A stretch of 32,000 nucleotides of DNA from Paramicrosporidium saccamoebae KSL3. Taxonomy: Eukaryota; Fungi; Cryptomycota. Each line of letters begins with the position of its first letter. Within the stretch, counting starts at the first letter, position 1. The stretch is taken from the NCBI GenBank assembly GCA_002794465.1, contig MTSL01000206.1:37313-69312 (forward strand), in the 5' to 3' direction. The notes under the pieces were generated by a model. That model searched no databases. It was not told where the DNA came from and saw only the letters and a list, made by a program, of their open reading frames with translations. The position numbers and the translations under genes were made by a program. This document shows positions 1 through 28,039 of this stretch, piece after piece.

Positions 1-1616
1 CTGAATGGCTTCGTAGCAAAGATCCATTCACTCCACCTGCCCTTATCTCAATTGAGGTTGCTGCGCGGAAAGGCCACGGCAACATTTTGGAATGGTACTG
101 GAAAAATTATGCACCCACCCCCACCATACACCAGCTCGTCTTCAGCAATCTACTCACAATAGCGGATTGGCTTCGTTCCAAATCTGGCGAACAGTACCCA
201 ACTCAGGCCGCAATCAATGAAGCAGTTCAACAAGGCCATACCCCAGCTCTTGAATGGATGTTAAATAAGAACTCTAAGATTGCACCAGACTTGGAGTCGG
301 TTGTAAAGACTGTGAGCAACGGATACGAAGGATCCTTGATCATCTTGTTGCAACATCGTCCCGGGTGCCTTTTAAATTCACAAGTTATCGATGCTCTCGC
401 TATTCGTGAGTATTGGTCTTTTATCAACTACCTATTGAATGTAAACATTGAATGGACTCCGAGTCAGTCAAATGCTGATCACATCCTGAACTCTGGTAAC
501 ACTGTAGTTTTGGCCAAATTTTTAAACTTGCCACGCACCTGTCGCCCCAGTCTAGCAAGCATTAATATGGCGGCATTACGCGGGCATACGGAAGGGCTTG
601 CCGTGGTTTTTGAAAAATTCTCCGATGCACTACCCGATGCGTCGACAATCAGCATGCTCTACATCACTGGTAGAGTAACAGTCATCCATTTTTTGTACAA
701 GGTCGTGCCAGGATTCATAACATCTCGGCTAGAGTTGAGCATAGCCGCTCTGAATGGCCATGTGGGCGTGTTAAAGTACTGTCATTTTAAAAATCCGACC
801 CTGCTACTTGACTTGAAATCCATAATGTATGCCAAAGCGATAGGGCATTCAGATGTGGAAGATTGGTTCATCAGCGCGTTAGCAAATTTACAAACAGCTG
901 GGACTCTACCAGATGTTAGAATTGATCACGTTTCAGATGAGACGATTAAAATTGATCCGACGCACGTCAAGGCGATGATAGAACTTTTGGCACAGCAGGA
1001 TTCGCTCGAAATAAGTGTAGCAAAGGTTGCTAAACAGCCAGAACTACTATCCACATCGAGTAACGAGGCACCGAATTTTCAACAAGAGACGCCGAATGGA
1101 TGGCGGAAAAGACTTTCTGAATTAACGGAGAACCAAATTGCCCCTCCACCCCTCTCAGTCTATCCTAGGATTCCGGCAGTCCCAGTTTCAGGCGTGCGGC
1201 TACTTGGTGATGACCCTGTAGCAGCAAATACTGGATCTTTGCAGCCACGGTTGGGACAAGTCGCATCTCTGAGAAATTCTAAAAGTAGCCTGAGGGCGCC
1301 ACCACCCACCCAAACAAGAGTTTATCCACCAAATCACTTACTAGAACTTTCTGAGAGTAGCACAAAGGTTTCGTCAAGGGCATCATCCCCAGCAAGGATT
1401 AATCCGACAAATCAGCTACAAGGATGTCAATTCCACATCCCTAAAAGGACATACGTGCATTCGATGGCCTCGTCCTCAGATGCACAGGCTTCTGATGTTA
1501 GGGTTGGAACAGAAAGCACTGAGCAACAACCGTCACCCATACCTACCAAAAGGCGGCGTCTTGACGACAACACCCGAAAACCACCACTAGCGGCACTTTT
1601 CCACGATTCAAGCTAA
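1..1616 (+). CDS. Ankyrin-repeat-like protein, tandem paralog A (5'-truncated by window edge)
   Basis: The frame is open from position 3 (EWLRSKDPFTPPALISIEVAARKGHGNILEW...), upstream of the listed TTG at 87. It has ankyrin-like repeats (AARKGH, AALRGH, AALNGH) and is collinear with the 1845-4004 protein. The disordered Ser/Pro-rich tail ends in PTKRRRL. Confidence 0.85.
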   Translation, partial: EWLRSKDPFTPPALISIEVAARKGHGNILEWYWKNYAPTPTIHQLVFSNLLTIADWLRSKSGEQYPTQAAINEAVQQGHTPALEWMLNKNSKIAPDLESVVKTVSNGYEGSLIILLQHRPGCLLNSQVIDALAIREYWSFINYLLNVNIEWTPSQSNADHILNSGNTVVLAKFLNLPRTCRPSLASINMAALRGHTEGLAVVFEKFSDALPDASTISMLYITGRVTVIHFLYKVVPGFITSRLELSIAALNGHVGVLKYCHFKNPTLLLDLKSIMYAKAIGHSDVEDWFISALANLQTAGTLPDVRIDHVSDETIKIDPTHVKAMIELLAQQDSLEISVAKVAKQPELLSTSSNEAPNFQQETPNGWRKRLSELTENQIAPPPLSVYPRIPAVPVSGVRLLGDDPVAANTGSLQPRLGQVASLRNSKSSLRAPPPTQTRVYPPNHLLELSESSTKVSSRASSPARINPTNQLQGCQFHIPKRTYVHSMASSSDAQASDVRVGTESTEQQPSPIPTKRRRLDDNTRKPPLAALFHDSS

Positions 1617-1736: not shown

Positions 1737-1844
1737 CTCCTGAATGAGCTTTGATAATCAAGTCCCTAGATCGCGAGCCTGCTGTAGTGTGAGTAGACCC
1801 AATTTAAAGTTTTAAAAATCCCAATTTTGCTGCCCCGGCAAAGC

Positions 1845-4004
1845 ATGGCCGCCAAATTTGTTATCCTCTGCAGCCTTGCGATTTTTTCCCGTGTATCGCC
1901 AGCTGCACACGTAGAATGTAGCTCCATTATCCCCGAAGGCACTTTTATTCGAACAGCACTTATTGGCACGCAGGGTCAAGGGTTAATATCGACCGTCTCC
2001 ATTAAATCTTCTCTGGAGGCCGGCGAGATGACACTGATAAACGCTTTAGCCTCCCAATGCCCCGAATGGACGCCTGACGGTGAACTGGTGACATATCTTG
2101 TGAAGCAGAACCTCCACAAAATCATTGAAATGCTATACAGAAAGAATTGTCGAGTCCAGCCGTCCATAAAGAACTTGGATGATGCGGCAAAATGGGGACA
2201 TTTGAATGTGCTCAGAGCATTCTTTGCTAACGATCAAGGAGCTTTGCCATCCCAAGTCGGGGTCAAACGAGCTATAGCCAAAGGTCACCTTGGGATTGTT
2301 AAATGGATGGCTAAAGTGAATCCATACTACTTCAACTATAAGCAACTAGCTCTCGTTGCCTCTAAATATGGCTATTTGGATCTTATCCAATGGATATTTA
2401 AAAAACAGGGTGTACTTCCATCGTATCTTGGCATTAATTATGCCGCGAGGGCGGGTCATTTGGACACTGTGAAATGGCTTTTTGCTATGGATCCATATAC
2501 TCTGCCCACGTTTCCCACCATGGAGATTGCAGCGCAAAAAGGTCATGATGATATCCTGCAATGGTGCCTCGACAACAGTGTGGCTGCCCCCAATTTAAAT
2601 CGACTCGTGTCCAACGACCAATTCGGTATAGCCAATTGGCTTTATCCCAGGTCTGATGGACACTATCCAAACCAGGCTGCAATCAATGAAGCAGTTAAGG
2701 AAGGCCGTGTTCAAGCCCTCAAATGGATGTTGGAAAAGAACTCCAAGATTGCACCAGACCTGGAGTCGATTGTAAAGACTGTAAACAACGGATACGAAGG
2801 GTGCCTGATCGTGTTGCTCGAGAACCGCCCCGAGTGCCTTTTAAACTCGCAAGTTATCCATGTCCTTGTTGCTCGTGGATATTGGTTTGTTATCGACGGC
2901 TTGCTTGAGTTAGACATTAAGTGGATGCCAAGCCAATCGAATGTTGACAATATCTTGGAATCCGGGAAGAGTGCAACCTTGGCCAAACTTTTAGACCTGC
3001 CACAATCTTGCCGCCCCAGCCAAGCAAGTATTAATCGGACTGCAAGAAATGGTCATGCAGACAGTCTCCACTCTCTTCTTGAAGAATTTCCCGATGCCCT
3101 GCCCGACGCATCGACAATTAGCTCACTCTACGCCAGCGGCAAGACGTCGGTCATTCATTTACTGTACACGGTTGTGCCAAGATTCACCACGTCTCAGCTA
3201 GAATTCAACTCTGCGGCTCTGAATGGCCATGTAGTCTTGCTAAAGTATTGCTACGTTAGAAACCCAACCCTACTTCTTGATTTGACAACTATATTATATG
3301 CCAAGAAGGCAGGACACTTACACGTGGAGGAGTGGTTCATCCGTCTGCTGACCCACTTGCAGGCAGCGGGGACTCTGCCAGCTATTAGAGTTGGTCATGT
3401 TTCCGAGCGGACAGTTAAAATTGATCCCACAGAGGTCAAGTCGATAGTGAAAATTTTGGCAAAGCAGACTTTACACAATGTAAGCGAGGCAAAGGTCCTT
3501 GAACAGCCGGAATCACTACCCAGATCAAGTGACGAGACCCATCGTCCTAGCCAAGAGGCATTGACTGAACGGCAAGGAAGATTTACTGAAACAACAGTGG
3601 GAAAAATAATTCTTCCTCCCATTTCAGTTTATCCTAGGATTCCGGCAGTCCCACGCGTGCAATCACCTAGCAGCGACACCACAATAGCAAGTGCTGGACA
3701 TTTACAGTCACGATCGAGGCAAATGGCGTCTCTAAACAATTCCCAAGAGAACCAAAGCATGTCACTAACGATACCATATACTCTAACAAGAGTTCGTTCA
3801 GCAAGTTCAAGCCATCTACCACAATCACAACCTCCCATACCTGTACGGGTATATAGATATCCGGTGCACCTATCTTCGGATACAAGATCTTCTAATGACA
3901 GGGTTGAAATAGGACACACTGAACACCAGCCATCATCCAGGCCAACCAAGAGAGCACGCCTTGACGGGAGTACCCACGAAGCCGCTGTTAGCACGTTACT
4001 TTAA
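1845..4004 (+). CDS. Putative secreted ankyrin-repeat-like protein, tandem paralog B
   Basis: First ATG is at 1845. The N-terminus MAAKFVILCSLAIFSRVSPAA looks like a signal peptide. Repeated ankyrin-like motifs (AAKWGHLNVL, AIAKGHLGIV, AARAGHLDTV, AAQKGHDDIL, AALNGH) follow, and the disordered C-terminus contains PTKRARL. No intron needed. Confidence 0.85.
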   Translation: MAAKFVILCSLAIFSRVSPAAHVECSSIIPEGTFIRTALIGTQGQGLISTVSIKSSLEAGEMTLINALASQCPEWTPDGELVTYLVKQNLHKIIEMLYRKNCRVQPSIKNLDDAAKWGHLNVLRAFFANDQGALPSQVGVKRAIAKGHLGIVKWMAKVNPYYFNYKQLALVASKYGYLDLIQWIFKKQGVLPSYLGINYAARAGHLDTVKWLFAMDPYTLPTFPTMEIAAQKGHDDILQWCLDNSVAAPNLNRLVSNDQFGIANWLYPRSDGHYPNQAAINEAVKEGRVQALKWMLEKNSKIAPDLESIVKTVNNGYEGCLIVLLENRPECLLNSQVIHVLVARGYWFVIDGLLELDIKWMPSQSNVDNILESGKSATLAKLLDLPQSCRPSQASINRTARNGHADSLHSLLEEFPDALPDASTISSLYASGKTSVIHLLYTVVPRFTTSQLEFNSAALNGHVVLLKYCYVRNPTLLLDLTTILYAKKAGHLHVEEWFIRLLTHLQAAGTLPAIRVGHVSERTVKIDPTEVKSIVKILAKQTLHNVSEAKVLEQPESLPRSSDETHRPSQEALTERQGRFTETTVGKIILPPISVYPRIPAVPRVQSPSSDTTIASAGHLQSRSRQMASLNNSQENQSMSLTIPYTLTRVRSASSSHLPQSQPPIPVRVYRYPVHLSSDTRSSNDRVEIGHTEHQPSSRPTKRARLDGSTHEAAVSTLL

Positions 4005-15145: not shown

Positions 15146-15716
15146 ATGACAACGGCTAATTATTTTCGTTTTGCCAGGTTGGCTGGAGTGGGATTTGTTA
15201 ATGTAAGGGTGGGGCTTGTTAAGGATATAAGGAATGAGGTTTGTTGAGAATGTAAGAAATGAGGCTGTTAAGCAGCATCCACTTACTATTAATGAGTCCG
15301 ACCCAGATAGCGGTCTCACAGTCCAATCTGATTCTATTAAGAATGGCCACCTATAAAAAGCCCATATGCTTTAATAAAAGATAGTTTCACCCATCAACAG
15401 AGCAGAGGCTTGTTGAGAATGTGAGGGATTTGACTGCATATTGATAATATACAAATTTCCTTTCGTCAAAAACCGTGCTGCAATGCAAGAAAACGATGAT
15501 ATTACACCCTTTATTACCTTATATTATCACCTTGTCGCGTAGTGGGGATAATACCACGGACTTTGTCAGGCGGAAAGAGACGAGAAGAGAAGACAAGAGA
15601 AGAGAAGGGAATCTATTCAGTTAATCCAACGACCCATTTATAGTCTCACAAATAACATTATCCTTCATCGATTGTTCTGATTATCCCTTCTTTATTGAGG
15701 ATCTCGACACACATGC

Positions 15717-22181: not shown

Positions 22182-22934
22182 CTATTTACGGAAAGCATCG
22201 ATCCGATAGGTTATAGCTCCCTCCACCACATGTTCCCCATCGTCGGTCAATTTTACCGTCGGGGTTAGCAATTCCTGGCACTGGCGCGTTATGTTTATGA
22301 CCCGGGGATATTTATCGAGTAATGTGCCTGGGAAATGAGTATCGCATGGCATGGATGGATGATCAGTCAGGCGAGTCAGGAAGACGCAATCACAGCCACC
22401 ATCATAATCACGGTTGAGGGCTGCTTCGTATATGCCACTTCCACCTAACATTAGACAGCTACTCTGTAACTTATACCAAGGATAAATATTTGACCTGTAC
22501 CGGCAAGTCGACTTGCTTCTTCTACTGCAGACTCAAAGCTTGTCACAGCAACAACATCGGGATGCCGATTTCCATCTTTTGCACTAATGCGTCAGGACAG
22601 TTATCCCATATCGATACTTGAAAGACTGCACATCTCGTGTAACAATGATATTGATTCGATCTTCCATAGGTTTGAACCGGGTGGGAATGGAGTCCCACGT
22701 CTTCCGTCCCATTATTACAGCATTTCTGACTCCTGTGTCGAGGTCTGTGAATCGTATACTGTCACCGCAACACTCGTAGTGATGAGTGGTTACAAATTTC
22801 AGGAACGCCATGTCCAGTTGCAATCTTTTTGGGTGCCATGGCAATTTCTCCTCATTCCCAATGCCCCATTCCTTTGTCACAGCCGCCACGACGGCAAACC
22901 TTCCGTCAACCTTCTGATTCGATAATAACGGCAT
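22182..22934 (-). CDS. DFR1: Dihydrofolate reductase (monofunctional)
   Basis: Exons 22934-22618, 22583-22477 and 22444-22182, with introns of 34 and 32 nt, giving 228 aa. Motifs VVAAV...GIG...LPW, NAVIMGRKTWDSIP, RINIIVTR, IFILGGSGIY and CDTHFP. Confidence 0.93.
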
Positions 22935-23056
22935 CCCCACGTCTTCTAATTGGTCCGTTGCCCTTTATTTTATTGGTTGCTGAGCGTTAACGACCGACCG
23001 TTTACCTCGTTATCTGGCGAGGCTGGGCATAGTTGTGCAGCCGTCCTGCCGAAAAA

Positions 23057-23697
23057 ATGTCGTCTCCAGGTCGGAGGATCCAAACGGACGTCATGAAGCT
23101 GTAAGGGGGCGTGCGGGAGAGTAACCTTGTTGTAGTATCATGGCCCAGTATGAGGTGCAGCTAATCAACGAAAGCATGCACGAGTTTTACGTCATGTTTT
23201 CCGGACCCAAAGAAAGTACCGCATAGGCGTTGTACTTATTTGTCGTAGCACCTTTTGAAGGCGGAGTTTGGAAAGTCCACGTGGAACTACCCGAGAACTA
23301 TCCGTACAAGTCACCCTCCATTGGTTTTATGAGTCGCATCTTCCATCCCAACATTGATGAAATGTATCCCGTCTGTCGTCACTAATCGGCTAGGAGTGGT
23401 TCTGTATGTCTCGACGTCATCAACCAGTCATGGAGTCCCATGTTCGATCTGATCAACGTCTTTGAAGTCTTCCTCCCTCAACTCCTGCGCTATCCAAATC
23501 CAAGCGACCCGCTGAACGGAGAGGCGGCTGCTCTTATGATGCGTGACCCAAAGAGCTACGAAACAAAAGTCAAGGACTATGTTCGTCGGTTTGCCTCGGG
23601 TGACTCCTCTGAGGTGGCCATGAAGGAGGATGCAGATTCTGAAGTATCCTCCATTGCATATTATTCAGACGATGAGGCAGAGCAGATGGAGTTGTAG
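23057..23697 (+). CDS. UBC8: Ubiquitin-conjugating enzyme E2 H (Ubc8)
   Basis: Exons 23057-23100, 23136-23215, 23249-23363 and 23394-23697, with introns of 35, 33 and 30 nt, giving 180 aa. Protein [15 protein letters not shown]...[37 protein letters not shown] with an acidic tail. Confidence 0.96.
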
Positions 23698-23711
23698 TAT
23701 AGTAAATAAAA

Positions 23712-23885
23712 TTTGCGTGGGTTAATAAGTGGAGAGTTCCATGGCGTGGGACGATGGTTAGAAAAGTTTATTGCGTGGGTTGACGATTAGAAGAATCCAT
23801 TGTGTGGCTTAATGAGCAGAGGAACCCATTGCGTGGGTTGATGAGCAGAGGAGTCCATTGCGTGGGTTGATGATTAGAAGAATCC
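23712..23885 (+). repeat. Minisatellite, 6 x 29 bp, overlapping the PMS1 start codon
   Basis: Contiguous indel-free units start at 23712, 23741, 23770, 23799, 23828 and 23857; consensus approximately ATTGCGTGGGTTGATGA(T/G)(T/C)AGA(A/G)GAATCC. The last unit supplies ATG 23870 and the first codons of PMS1. Confidence 0.95.
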
Positions 23886-25714
23886 ACGGTGGAACGGTCA
23901 GAGACTTGGCTGCAGCACAAGTCATTTTGGACCTGAGCGCGGCTGTAAAAGAATTGATTGAGAATAGCATTGATGCTGGAGCAACTCAAATTGGTAAAAA
24001 GACCATAGTGTGCACTAAACAATACAGTGGTATCATTTTGGGGACTGGGATTGGAGGCTGTGGAAGTGACGGATGACGGCTGTGGTATTAGCGTCGAGGA
24101 CATGCACATTTTGGGAGAAAGGCATTGCACCTCTAAAATTACCACCGACGAGGATATCTATCAAGTACAGACGTTTGGATTTCGAGGCGAAGCACTCCAC
24201 TCATTGGCGGCACTTTCTGAAGACCTTGTAGTGACCAGCCAAACTAGGACAAACTCGACCGGCACCGGCCTACGTGTAAACCTTAAGAGCAAAGATACTG
24301 CCACACGCGTAGCCTGTCCAAGCGGGACCACAGTGAGATTGAGTGGCTTATTGTCATCGCTGCCGGTTCGACGGGCGGAATGGGAGCGAAATGCAAAGCG
24401 TCACCTTGCGCGGGCTCTCTGGCTCGTGCAGTCATATATTTTGGCAGTTCCAAACGTTAGAATTAGATGCATTGGGTGTACTAATGGCAAGTCGAGCGTA
24501 TATTTTGCGTCAAGTGGATCAAATGATGCAAGCAAGGCATACGCAGAAGCATTCAAGGGAGAAATCAAGGGCTCCTTCCAGACCGCCTCAGTTGAGACGG
24601 AAGCATTCACTGCTACGCTGTATTTCACACGAGAAGGGAGGAGGTCGGCCGATCGACAATTTTCATTTCTCAACAGTCGACCGTGCGATTTGCCACGCGT
24701 AATGAAAAAGCTTAACGAGACATTTCGGAATCATTCCTCGGATGTCATTTTTCCCATTTTTGTTCTCTTCATAAGTACCAATTCGCGGGTGGATGCCAAT
24801 CTGACTCCTGACAAACGACAAGTTTCGATTCCCTTTGAAGACAGCCTCATTACATGTCTGTGTCAAGAATTTGACCAGGCGCTTACTGACAAGATTGAGA
24901 TACCAGTGAAACTGGCGCCAATCAAAGCTAGCGCTCCGTCGGATGATCAAATCCCATCTTCGCTATTCTCAAAGCCCGATATCAGAGACTGTAGCCACTG
25001 CACAGACGTCTTGCCTCAGGCCCATGTCCACGTGGACGTTTCCCTCGACAATTATGCTCAAATCTTGGAACGCAGCGATTTTGGTCGTATGCAAATTTTG
25101 GGTCAGTTTAATCACGGATTTGTTCTAACCAAGATTGAAGATGCAACAAAGGGAACAAGAGTGTTCATTGTGGATCAACATGCGTCCGATGAGAGGTTTC
25201 GATTAGAATCATTACAGAGGGATCTTTCGTTTACTTGTCAAGCAATGTTGGTCCCCATCAAGGTTACAACTGGTCTCGACGACGTCATGTACATAATCGA
25301 CAACCAAAAGGCTTTTTCTGAGCTTGGATTCGTAGTTCGTGTTCAAGACGACGACGATGGCAGGTCTATTTCATTGCTATCGTCGCCTTTTGTGGCGGGA
25401 ATTCAACTTGCCGAGTCTGGTATACCTTTGGGTAAATATTAATACGCAGATTTTCTGGAAATGGTGTCGCTGATGAGGTTGGAGGAATTTGCCGGACTAC
25501 ACTGCTTATCACGAGTTGCAGAACAACTGGCATACCGAGCGTGCCGGTCTGCAATCATGATTGGAGATGCTCTCAATCTTCAGCAAATGGTCCAAGTGGT
25601 ACGGAATTTGGAGGGCCTCCAAAGACCATGGGTATCAAAACATGTCCAATTTATTTGTAGATTTGCGCACACGGAAGGCCTACAGTCCGGCTATTATACA
25701 TAACTGCCGCCTAG
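23870..25714 (+). CDS. PMS1: MutL-family mismatch repair endonuclease Pms1 (human PMS2 ortholog)
   Basis: Exons 23870-23993, 24028-25419, 25450-25631 and 25661-25714, with introns of 34, 30 and 29 nt, giving 583 aa. GHKL motifs AVKELIENSIDAGA, DDGCG and TFGFRGEALHSL. Endonuclease motifs DQHASDERFRLE, ACRSAIMIG and PWICAHGRPT. Confidence 0.93.
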
Positions 25715-26943: not shown

Positions 26944-27894
26944 TTAAACAATGTTAGCTCCGGAAGCCTCGCCTTGGTCCTCGGGGCTGTCAATCTTGTC
27001 GGGCGATGATTGGCTAATATCCAAATAACGATTAAAACGCTGCTCTGTGGGCGATCCAGACTGCTGGTTAGTTATGGGCGGAAAGTACATTCGATACGAC
27101 GAGTACGCGGCGATTGTTCCGATAATAGCGCCAGCAAGGACGTCCTGCCAATGGTGACGATAATCTATGATGCGGGTTAGCCCCACACATCCCGCTAACA
27201 GGAACGGCAACATGGAGACGACCAATTTGTAAACATGCCCTTCGCCATCAAATACTCCAAGCTGGCCAGCCAGGAAGAATCCAGCATAGCCCAGACCTCC
27301 GAACGAGGCTGAAGTGTGACCAGAGGGAAAACTCCTCCTTCCCTCATGAACCAGCTTTATCGGCCCACGACACACAACTTTGCTTAGGATAGATGGATCC
27401 GGATCACATCTGGCCAAGAAATCCGGCCTTGGTCTTCCCACCATTGGCTTAATCAACGTCGTCAACTGCACCGTAATCAACAGTGAAAGTAACAATCCCA
27501 AATAAACCACCAGCAGCTTCCTATTCCGAAACTGTCTAATCCCGAGCCATCCCGTAATCAAAATCAACGGGATGATAAGCGCAAAGATTGGCACTGCCCA
27601 GTGCGGGATAATTTCGCTCTCAACATGAGGGAACATGATTGAACGGTCATCACGCCAGACAATTCGCTCGAACGGTGGGATTGTAAAAATTAGAAAGTAC
27701 GGAAGGGTAAGGACAAGAATTAGTAGCAGGTCATAGAGATAACTGACCAACAGACGCCGACGAGTAAAGAATCCACATAGCGCCGACATGAATCTGCGAC
27801 GGCTGAGCAGTACCCCAACCTTATTGGGCGGTGTCATGCCCTCTTTGAGTCGCACCCAATCGAATTGCTCGACCAGCCTCATTGGCGATGACAT
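26944..27894 (-). CDS. DPP1: PAP2-family lipid phosphate phosphatase (Dpp1/Lpp1-like)
   Basis: Motifs KPMVGRPRPDFLARC, SFPSGHTS and TRIIDYRHHWQDVLAG, with multiple TM helices. The start is ambiguous among in-frame ATGs at 27954, 27894 (both in the repeat) and 27882. Confidence 0.9.
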   Translation of the reverse strand: MSSPMRLVEQFDWVRLKEGMTPPNKVGVLLSRRRFMSALCGFFTRRRLLVSYLYDLLLILVLTLPYFLIFTIPPFERIVWRDDRSIMFPHVESEIIPHWAVPIFALIIPLILITGWLGIRQFRNRKLLVVYLGLLLSLLITVQLTTLIKPMVGRPRPDFLARCDPDPSILSKVVCRGPIKLVHEGRRSFPSGHTSASFGGLGYAGFFLAGQLGVFDGEGHVYKLVVSMLPFLLAGCVGLTRIIDYRHHWQDVLAGAIIGTIAAYSSYRMYFPPITNQQSGSPTEQRFNRYLDISQSSPDKIDSPEDQGEASGANIV

Positions 27895-28039
27895 GTGTAG
27901 TTTGGTGATAACTGGTGTGGTTTGACCATGACATGTGTATTTTGGTGATGACATGTGTAGTCTAGCGATGACGTGTGTATTTTGGCAATAGTGGATGTAG
28001 TTTGGCAGTAATGGCGTGTGTAGTTTAGCGGTGACATGT
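27881..28039. repeat. Minisatellite, about 8 x 20 bp, overlapping the DPP1 start region
   Basis: Units start at 27881, 27901, 27921, 27941, 27961, 27981, 28001 (23 nt) and 28024 (partial); consensus approximately TTTGGYGATGACATGTGTAG. Confidence 0.92.

What the first reader, a model, noticed from the sequence alone, without database searches (positions are those of the whole stretch)
23712..23899. Minisatellite built from the PMS1 start codon creates a chain of stop-start uORFs
Seen: six 29-bp units fill the whole gap between the UBC8 poly(A) signal (AATAAA at 23705-23710) and PMS1, and the last unit encodes the real start MIRRIH. Because the unit is 29 nt and contains T(G/A)ATG, the upstream copies form successive 9-codon uORFs whose stop overlaps the next start: ATG23754 MVRKVYCVG-TGA, ACG23783 ..IRRIHCVA-TAA, ATG23812 MSRGTHCVG-TGA, ATG23841 MSRGVHCVG-TGA, then the PMS1 ATG at 23870. 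Established: uORFs dampen main-ORF translation, TGATG/TAATG overlaps permit termination-reinitiation, and MMR dosage sets the mutation rate. Inference: a copy-number-variable element tuning a mismatch-repair gene, i.e. a potential mutator rheostat. The stop-start geometry follows automatically from the unit sequence, so it is not by itself proof of selection.
Basis: partly seen in the sequence, partly recalled or inferred. Interest (0 to 1): 0.7.

Follow-up and report, generated by a model that had tools for sequence, protein, structure and literature searches.

The report
Start-codon minisatellite upstream of PMS1
In the amoeba parasite Paramicrosporidium saccamoebae, the 29 bases around the start codon of the mismatch-repair gene PMS1 have been copied six times in a row, where its closest known relative has one copy; this looks like one case of a general habit of these compact genomes, not a proven mutation-rate dial.

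Summary
Six head-to-tail 29-nt units lie at 23714-23887. Each holds 11 nt of leader, the ATG and 15 nt of coding sequence. They fill the gap between the UBC8 stop (23695-23697) and the PMS1 ATG (23870), which sits in the last unit.

The window is P. saccamoebae KSL3. A sister lineage, seen in three independent metagenome contigs (84-90% DNA identity), has exactly one unit and a 27-nt UBC8-PMS1 gap. More distant relatives have unrelated, mostly repeat-free gaps of 53-227 nt. The array is therefore lineage-specific, and copy number differs 6 versus 1.

The "mutator rheostat" reading is not supported:
- The units are old and diverged (76% matches).
- KSL3 shows no excess substitutions relative to its sister, and PMS1 is equally constrained in both.
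- Other spacers in KSL3 and its sister carry their own unrelated lineage-specific minisatellites.

Whether the repeats are transcribed could not be tested here.

Best reading: a nearly neutral spacer expansion that, if it lies in the mRNA leader, would dampen PMS1 translation.

The parts
23057..23697 (+). UBC8 (E2 H-type ubiquitin-conjugating enzyme) gene. My model has 4 exons and introns at 23101-23135, 23216-23248 and 23364-23393. Stop TAG at 23695-23697.
   Evidence: Spliced model of 180 aa. Pfam UQ_con, E=2.4e-40. Best named hits are UBC8 / E2 H.
23698..23713 (+). A/T-rich spacer TATAGTAAATAAAATT, containing AATAAA (23705-23710). Likely the UBC8 polyadenylation signal and/or the ancestral PMS1 promoter-proximal element.
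   Evidence: With the next 10 nt it forms a 26-nt block identical in KSL3 and the sister lineage, although 4-fold sites differ at 31-42%. The role is inferred.
23714..23887 (+). Minisatellite of six 29-nt units (u1 23714, u2 23743, u3 23772, u4 23801, u5 23830, u6 23859). Each unit = 11 nt PMS1 leader + ATG + 15 nt PMS1 coding sequence.
   Evidence: TRF, unit table, alignment A2 with the sister's single copy.
23754..23783 (+). uORF MVRKVYCVG* from unit 2. Its ATG has A at -3 and G at +4. Its stop overlaps the ACG that replaces the ATG of unit 3.
23812..23841 (+). uORF MSRGTHCVG* from unit 4. Its TGA overlaps the next ATG.
23841..23870 (+). uORF MSRGVHCVG* from unit 5. Its TGA overlaps the PMS1 ATG.
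23870..25714 (+). PMS1 (MutL-family) gene, corrected model of 583 aa. Exons 23870-23993, 24028-25419, 25450-25631, 25661-25714. Introns of 34, 30 and 29 nt.
   Evidence: Pfam HATPase_c_3, DNA_mis_repair and MutL_C all above cut-off. 97% identical to the GenBank P. saccamoebae Pms1 over the shared part.

Best explanation
This is a lineage-specific minisatellite. It arose by repeated tandem duplication of a 29-bp segment that straddles the PMS1 translation start: 11 nt of leader, the ATG and the first 15 coding nt.

The ancestral state, still present in the sister lineage, is a single copy with only 27 nt between the UBC8 stop and the PMS1 ATG. In strain KSL3 five extra copies were added upstream, stretching the gap to 172 nt. 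The last copy stays under coding constraint and is the real start. The upstream copies are pseudo-starts that are decaying; two of the five have already lost their ATG.

The array is one instance of a general mutational habit of this small clade, in which short intergenic spacers spawn unrelated minisatellites.

Its most likely consequence is inferred, not shown. The unit carries only 11 nt of upstream sequence, so the core promoter was probably left at the 5' edge. The array would then lie in the PMS1 5' leader, where its four uAUGs would lower PMS1 translation somewhat. There is no sign that this has been used as an adjustable mutation-rate control.
For: Structure.

Organism and locus: P. 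saccamoebae KSL3, contig MTSL01000206.1.

Single-unit sister state: three independent contigs (L015 and L016 from JGI, L017 from Logan) read TAG-TATAGTAAATAAAATTTGCGTGGGTTG-ATGATTAGGAGAATCCATGG. This is exactly the sequence predicted by deleting five units from the window.

Register: u1 begins TT|TGCG (from AAAATT), whereas u2-u6 begin AT|TGCG or AT|GGCG (from ..CCAT). This fits a head-to-tail duplication junction.

Outgroups: gene order and the MIRRI-type start are conserved, but the spacers are 53-227 nt, unrelated in sequence and without this repeat.

Age: the oldest units differ from the ancestral unit at 9 of 29 sites. That is comparable with, or a little above, half the pairwise 4-fold divergence between the lineages (p = 0.31-0.42).

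Generality:
- KSL3 has a second array (20 nt x 7.8 copies, 27882-28039) that is single-copy in the sister.
- The sister has its own arrays of 27, 18 and 15 nt in its spacers; these regions no longer align with KSL3.
- About 60 kb from eight more distant relatives has none.

No functional decay and no mutator signal:
- PMS1 domains are intact.
- Lineage-specific amino-acid changes are 7 (KSL3) versus 5 (sister).
- Lineage-specific nucleotide changes are 36 versus 44 in PMS1 and 9 versus 10 in UBC8.

The array has no unusual RNA structure (z = -0.96) and no Rfam match.
Against: - The transcription start is unknown. If it lies in the last unit, the upstream copies are simply promoter or spacer DNA and have no translational effect.
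- The leader-derived 10 nt of the units are better kept than the rest. Against the sister's single copy, all six units give 5 mismatches in 60 cells versus 30 in 114. Against the array consensus, u1-u5 give 5 in 50 versus 23 in 95. In u1 the contrast is 0 of 10 versus 9 of 19. This hints that something in the units is still selected, which a purely neutral view does not predict.
- Loss of units in the sister, as opposed to gain in KSL3, cannot be strictly excluded.
- Only about 1 kb of sequence was available for the rate test.
Confidence: 0.7

Rival explanations
1. The array lies in the PMS1 5' leader. Its chain of stop-start uORFs sets PMS1 translation, and gain or loss of units tunes mismatch-repair dosage and hence mutation rate (a mutator rheostat).
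For: - The uORF geometry is confirmed.
- Copy number differs 6 versus 1 between sister lineages.
- The unit carries only 11 nt of upstream sequence, so the promoter probably sits 5' of the array.
- The ancestral 27-nt leader has no uATG.
- u3, the youngest upstream copy, differs from the real start unit u6 at only two positions; one is the synonymous CAT/CAC at the unit's last base and the other turns its ATG into ACG. That pattern is what selection against a transcribed uATG would leave, though the chance of a hit in the ATG is about 0.1.
- A bacterial precedent exists: repeats in mutL act as mutability switches (PMC2955026).
Against: - The units are diverged (15-28 of 29 positions identical), so slippage or unequal exchange should be slow.
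- The three sister samples all have 1 unit.
- There is no rate acceleration in KSL3 (45 versus 54 changes) and no relaxation of PMS1.
- Comparable arrays sit next to unrelated genes in both lineages.
- Reinitiation after short uORFs needs an intercistronic distance (PMC5972666), which the UGAUG overlaps lack.
- In Aspergillus only 4.3% of promoter tandem-repeat polymorphisms correlated with expression (PMC3516485).
- From general knowledge: 29-nt loops are outside the usual range of mismatch repair, so no feedback loop is expected.
Confidence: 0.1
2. The array acts at the DNA or transcription level. Either it is a cluster of a cis-regulatory motif (TGCGTGGGTT) that drives PMS1, or it is a selected spacer that separates UBC8 3'-end formation from the PMS1 promoter. 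In the sister lineage these two must overlap within 27 nt.
For: - The leader-derived 10 nt are the best-kept part of the units, and GCGTGGG is intact in 5 of 6.
- The 26 nt after the UBC8 stop are identical between lineages despite about 35% neutral divergence. Chance of this is roughly 1e-5.
- In u1, all 9 changes fall outside the first 10 nt (hypergeometric p about 0.009, computed).
- A 27-nt gap leaves no room for separate poly(A) and promoter signals.
- Microsporidia, the sister group, have an AAATTT-like signal plus a CCC/GGG motif just upstream of the ATG, 5' UTRs under 7 nt, and transcriptional overrun (PMC2803860). The ancestral AAAATTTGCGTGGGTTG-ATG has that layout.
Against: - GCGTGGG is not enriched elsewhere: there are 3 other hits in the window, all inside coding ORFs, against 3.4 expected.
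- Other genes in the window do not show an AAATTT + GGG/CCC layout.
- The motif is absent upstream of PMS1 in more distant relatives.
- Conservation at the 5' edge can be explained by UBC8 polyadenylation alone.
- The units are not independent samples.
Confidence: 0.15
3. Assembly artefact. Either the array in KSL3 is a mis-assembly, or the single unit in the sister contigs is a collapsed repeat.
For: Short-read assemblies can collapse or inflate perfect tandem repeats.
Against: - The KSL3 units are all distinguishable from one another and lie inside a 70.8-kb contig.
- The single-unit state was assembled identically in three samples by two pipelines, with unique junctions on both sides.
Confidence: 0.03

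Closest known systems
Promoter or 5'-UTR minisatellites (VNTRs) that modulate expression, e.g. the human TYMS 28-bp 5'-UTR repeat (PMC3320636, PMC2528158) and yeast promoter tandem repeats (Vinces et al. 2009, as summarised in PMC3516485)
   Same: A tandem array of about 28-29-bp units directly upstream of the start codon of a DNA-metabolism gene. Copy number differs between related genomes. It can act as a "tuning knob".
   Different: Here the unit includes the start codon and the first five codons, so each copy brings a pseudo-start and a uORF. Variation is shown only between sister lineages, not within a population. No expression data exist.
Tandem-repeat mutability switches inside bacterial mutL/mutS (Chen et al. 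2010, PMC2955026)
   Same: A repeat physically linked to a MutL-family repair gene, whose copy number could change repair capacity.
   Different: The bacterial switches are perfect short repeats (for example 6 bp) inside the coding sequence that flip the protein on and off at high frequency. This is a diverged 29-bp array outside the functional ORF in a eukaryote, with no mutator signature.
GCN4/ATF4-type multi-uORF leaders and termination-reinitiation (PMC5972666, PMC10275272)
   Same: Several very short uORFs (6-9 codons) precede a main ORF.
   Different: Those uORFs are conserved and are spaced so that ternary complex can be re-acquired. Here they are absent from the nearest relative, arose by duplication, and abut or overlap the next AUG.
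Microsporidian compact gene starts (AAATTT-like signal, CCC/GGG motif, 5' UTR under 7 nt, transcript overrun; PMC2803860)
   Same: The ancestral single-copy arrangement AAATAAAATTTGCGTGGGTTG-ATG, 27 nt after the upstream stop, looks like this layout. It implies overlapping UBC8 and PMS1 signals.
   Different: Other P. saccamoebae genes in the window do not show the layout, so it cannot be assumed to be the rule in this organism.

Membership tests
Minisatellite / VNTR | Head-to-tail copies of a 10-100 bp unit | tested here: met
   Six 29-nt units with 76% matches.
Minisatellite / VNTR | Copy number varies between genomes | tested here: met
   6 units in KSL3 versus 1 in three sister-lineage contigs. 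Within-species variation could not be tested, because no second KSL3-type assembly exists in the collections.
uORF-mediated translational control | The uORFs lie in the transcribed 5' leader | not testable with these tools
   No RNA-derived contig of P. saccamoebae is in the collections. RNA-seq exists according to PMC5701793.
uORF-mediated translational control | The uORFs are conserved in relatives | tested here: not met
   The sister lineage has a 27-nt uATG-free gap. Other relatives have unrelated spacers.
uORF-mediated translational control | Spacing after short uORFs allows reinitiation | tested here: not met
   The last two uORF stops overlap the next AUG (UGAUG). The distance requirement is from PMC5972666.
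Repeat-based mutator switch (contingency locus) at a mismatch-repair gene | Near-identical units that allow frequent reversible slippage | tested here: not met
   Pairwise unit identity is 15-28 of 29 positions. Only u3/u6 are near-identical.
Repeat-based mutator switch (contingency locus) at a mismatch-repair gene | The carrier lineage shows elevated mutation or substitution | tested here: not met
   Relative-rate counts are 36 versus 44 (PMS1) and 9 versus 10 (UBC8), with binomial p of 0.43 and 1.0. The sample is small, about 1 kb.
MutL / PMS1 family (the downstream gene) | GHKL ATPase N-terminus, DNA_mis_repair domain, and MutL_C with endonuclease motifs | tested here: met
   Pfam HATPase_c_3 (33 bits), DNA_mis_repair (47 bits) and MutL_C (59 bits) are all above cut-off. 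DQHASDERFRLE and CAHGRPT are present in the model. Top named hits are PMS1/PMS2.

The most novel reading that the evidence does not exclude
The array is transcribed as the PMS1 leader. Through its uAUG chain it keeps mismatch-repair dosage in KSL3 well below that of its single-unit sister. Rare unit gain or loss then gives heritable, reversible steps in mutation rate. This would be a eukaryotic counterpart of the bacterial mutL repeat switches, created by duplicating the gene's own start codon.
Probability: 0.07. Interest if true: 0.75.

Novelty: new member of a known kind. Interest (0 to 1): 0.3.

Why it matters
If the array does sit in the mRNA, it is a clean natural experiment. Two sister lineages differ by 0 versus 4 uAUGs in front of an otherwise conserved repair gene.

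More broadly, the locus shows how an extremely compact genome re-expands a spacer, here from a 27-nt gap between two genes. It does so by copying the sequence around a start codon, which leaves decaying pseudo-starts behind.

It also has a practical side. In this genome, annotated start codons that fall inside such arrays (PAP2 in this window) should be treated with suspicion.

As a candidate for control of mutation rate it is weak.

Tried and rejected
1. I looked for RNA-derived or independent DNA assemblies of P. saccamoebae, to see the TSS or allelic copy numbers. Exact look-ups of RPS4, UBC8 and PMS1 products found only the GenBank genome.
2. A metagenome scan with the PMS1 protein gave only distant relatives. 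The informative sister lineage came from searching with the UBC8 last exon.
3. RNA structure of the array shows no signal (z = -0.96). There is no Rfam family.
4. A microsporidian-type AAATTT + CCC/GGG promoter as a general rule in this genome is not seen at the other gene starts in the window.
5. GCGTGGG as a recurrent promoter motif is not enriched outside the array.
6. The bacterial promoter/terminator scan is irrelevant and empty.
7. I first thought the second array straddles the true PAP2 start. Alignment with relatives suggests the true start is further downstream, near 27789, so that array is 5'-proximal and does not span the start.
8. A higher-order 87-bp repeat (u1-3 / u4-6) is supported only by the u3/u6 pair, so I rejected it.

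Full report
**What is there.** The window is part of contig MTSL01000206.1 of Paramicrosporidium saccamoebae strain KSL3, an intranuclear parasite of amoebae. Window position equals record position minus 37312. Between the stop codon of a UBC8/E2-H gene (TAG 23695-23697) and the ATG of PMS1 (23870) lie 172 nt. TRF reports a 29-nt array at 23738-23886 with 5.1 copies and 76% matches. Laid out by hand there are six units.

The natural register is TGCGTGGGTTGATGATTAGAAGAATCCAT, spanning 23714-23887. That is 11 nt of leader, the ATG and 15 nt of coding sequence. The core 17-mer occurs five times in the window, all within the array, against 0.2 expected by chance. The array ranks first in an autocorrelation scan of the whole window.

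There is one more at 23741, MAWDDG*.

**The downstream gene.** The GenBank model (P0001) starts at the same ATG. That model mis-splices intron 1 and stops early. My model has exons 23870-23993, 24028-25419, 25450-25631 and 25661-25714, giving 583 aa. It restores the GHKL ATPase domain and the C-terminal endonuclease motifs, and it scores above the Pfam cut-off for HATPase_c_3, DNA_mis_repair and MutL_C. Eight uncultured relatives start PMS1 with MIR(R/H/P)(I/L) at the aligned position, and a ninth (L002) with MVMLRRI (L002). The last unit therefore holds the ancestral, real start.

**Comparative evidence.** Gene order is conserved in all relatives recovered from Logan, ENA and JGI assemblies: PDF, DHFR, UBC8, PMS1, PP2C, PAP2, RPS4.

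| Locus | UBC8 stop to PMS1 ATG gap | Source |
|---|---|---|
| L007 | 53 nt | |
| L002 | about 75 nt | |
| L005 | about 97 nt | |
| L020 / L023 | 123 nt | |
| L003 | 198 nt | |
| L018 | 227 nt | |

These gaps are unrelated in sequence and none contains the 29-nt repeat. L018 has small repeats of its own.

The decisive result came from searching with the last exon of UBC8. It found a sister lineage with 99% UBC8 amino-acid identity. Its DNA identity to the window is 89.9% over UBC8 and 83.8% over the first 720 nt of PMS1. The lineage is present in three independent contigs, from two JGI samples and one Logan run.

All three contigs read ...GAGTTG TAG TATAGTAAATAAAATTTGCGTGGGTTG ATG ATTAGGAGAATCCATGGTGG.... 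That is exactly one unit and a 27-nt gap. It is precisely the sequence predicted by removing five units from the window. It also explains why unit 1 begins TT|TGCG (after AAAATT) whereas units 2-6 begin AT|TGCG or AT|GGCG (after ..CCAT). The array is therefore specific to the KSL3 lineage, and copy number differs 6 versus 1.

**Age.** Four-fold degenerate sites differ at 42% (PMS1) and 31% (UBC8) between KSL3 and its sister. The outer units u1 and u2 each differ from the ancestral unit at 9 of 29 sites. Unit u5 differs at 5, u4 at 8, and u3 at 2. Unit u3 is 28/29 identical to u6. The first duplications are thus about as old as the split from the sister, and the last event, or a gene conversion, is recent. 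This is an old, mostly decayed array. It does not look like a set of near-identical units prone to frequent slippage.

**Is it special to PMS1?** No. The window's second minisatellite (27882-28039, 20 nt x 7.8 copies) sits at the 5' end of the PAP2 ORF. A contig from what appears to be the same sister lineage (L019, 84-85% DNA identity) has a single copy of that unit. L019 carries three different arrays of its own, of 27, 18 and 15 nt, in the RPS4-PAP2 and PAP2-PP2C spacers. About 60 kb from eight more distant relatives has no array of period 9 or more at the same threshold. Minisatellite birth in spacers is therefore a general trait of this small subclade. The genome paper reports 0.53% repeats, mostly simple, and 76% gene space (PMC5701793).

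**Tests of the rheostat idea.**
- With L018 as outgroup, PMS1 has 7 KSL3-specific and 5 sister-specific amino-acid changes in 231 residues.
- Lineage-specific nucleotide changes are 36 versus 44 in PMS1 and 9 versus 10 in UBC8.
- PMS1 is thus not relaxed, and KSL3 shows no long-term mutator signature. The sample is only about 1 kb.
- The three sister samples are identical at this site.
- Reinitiation after short uORFs generally needs an intercistronic distance to re-acquire ternary complex (PMC5972666). The UGAUG overlaps lack that distance, so if the chain is translated it would mostly be inhibitory.
- No RNA-derived or second DNA assembly of P. saccamoebae is in the collections. The TSS and within-species copy number could therefore not be tested.

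**What may still be functional.** The 26 nt after the UBC8 stop (TATAGTAAATAAAATTTGCGTGGGTT) are identical in both lineages, despite about 35% neutral divergence and otherwise unalignable spacers. Within u1 the first 10 nt are intact, whereas 9 of the next 19 have changed. Across units the leader-derived 10 nt are better kept than the coding-derived part.

The simplest reading is that this block carries the UBC8 polyadenylation signals (AATAAA at 23705-23710) and/or the ancestral PMS1 promoter-proximal element. The single-copy layout AAAATTT-GCGT-GGG-TTG-ATG resembles the microsporidian AAATTT plus GGG/CCC arrangement with very short 5' UTRs (PMC2803860). Other genes in this window do not share that layout, and GCGTGGG is not enriched elsewhere.

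The unit carries only 11 nt of upstream sequence. I therefore infer, at about 60% probability, that transcripts reaching the PMS1 ATG start at or before the 5' edge of the array, so that the uAUGs are in the leader. A further hint is that u3, the youngest upstream copy, differs from u6 only at the unit's last base (CAT/CAC) and by ATG to ACG. The chance of a hit in the ATG is about 0.1.

**Verdict.** The origin of the array is settled: a tandem duplication that spans the start codon, absent from the sister lineage. The functional interpretation remains an inference. The evidence favours a nearly neutral spacer expansion with, at most, a dampening effect on PMS1 translation. It does not favour an adaptive, adjustable mutator device. 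In kind, this is a 5'-proximal VNTR, comparable to the TYMS 28-bp 5'-UTR repeat (PMC3320636) or to yeast promoter repeats (summarised in PMC3516485). Its unusual detail is that the unit contains the gene's own start codon.

Noticed in passing
window 27882-28039 (minus strand): A second minisatellite: 20 nt x 7.8 copies, minus-strand unit ACTACACATGTCATCGCCAA, containing ATG. It lies at the 5' end of the PAP2 ORF. The annotated PAP2 start (27954) lies inside it, but relatives and the sister lineage start at the equivalent of M56 (about 27789). The first 55 annotated residues are therefore doubtful. The sister contig L019 has a single copy of the unit.
   Followed up: yes
L019 117-159, 252-357, 1380-1424: The sister-lineage contig carries its own unrelated minisatellites (18 nt x 2.4, 27 nt x 3.9, 15 nt x 3.0) in the RPS4-PAP2 and PAP2-PP2C spacers. 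The PAP2-PP2C spacer is about 500 nt there, against 89 nt in KSL3.
   Followed up: partly
window 23870-25714: The GenBank PMS1 model (502 aa) uses a wrong first intron, which deletes ATPase motif I (VKELIENSIDAGATQI). It also ends at 25442, missing two short introns and the last two exons, which carry the ACRSAIMIGD and CAHGRPT motifs. The corrected model is 583 aa.
   Followed up: yes
window 23057-23697 and 22191-23094: The annotated UBC8 is 115 aa and the annotated DHFR start (23094) overlaps the UBC8 start. A 4-exon UBC8 model of 180 aa with 30-35-nt introns fits the family much better. DHFR probably starts near 22934.
   Followed up: partly
window 23698-23723 versus L015 645-670: The 26-nt block after the UBC8 stop is 100% identical between KSL3 and its sister, while 4-fold sites differ at 31-42% and most other spacers no longer align. 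It is a strongly constrained element whose function is unproven: a poly(A) signal and/or a promoter.
   Followed up: partly
window 15200-15272 (and a related copy near 15425), minus strand: A decayed array of about 25-nt units (cctcatttcttacattctcaacaa-like), plus an (AAGAG)7 microsatellite at 15575-15611. Both lie in a 700-nt intergenic region between the PRPP-synthetase gene and the next gene.
   Followed up: no
window 87-1616 and 1827-4004: Two adjacent paralogous ORFs with ankyrin-like repeats share long stretches of near-identical protein sequence. This looks like a tandem gene duplication.
   Followed up: no
L018 1106-1142 and 1180-1205: In the next-closest relative, the UBC8-PMS1 spacer (227 nt) contains its own small repeats (AAAACTATA x 4, GTAGATCG.. 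x 2) and a C-rich tract just before the PMS1 ATG.
   Followed up: no
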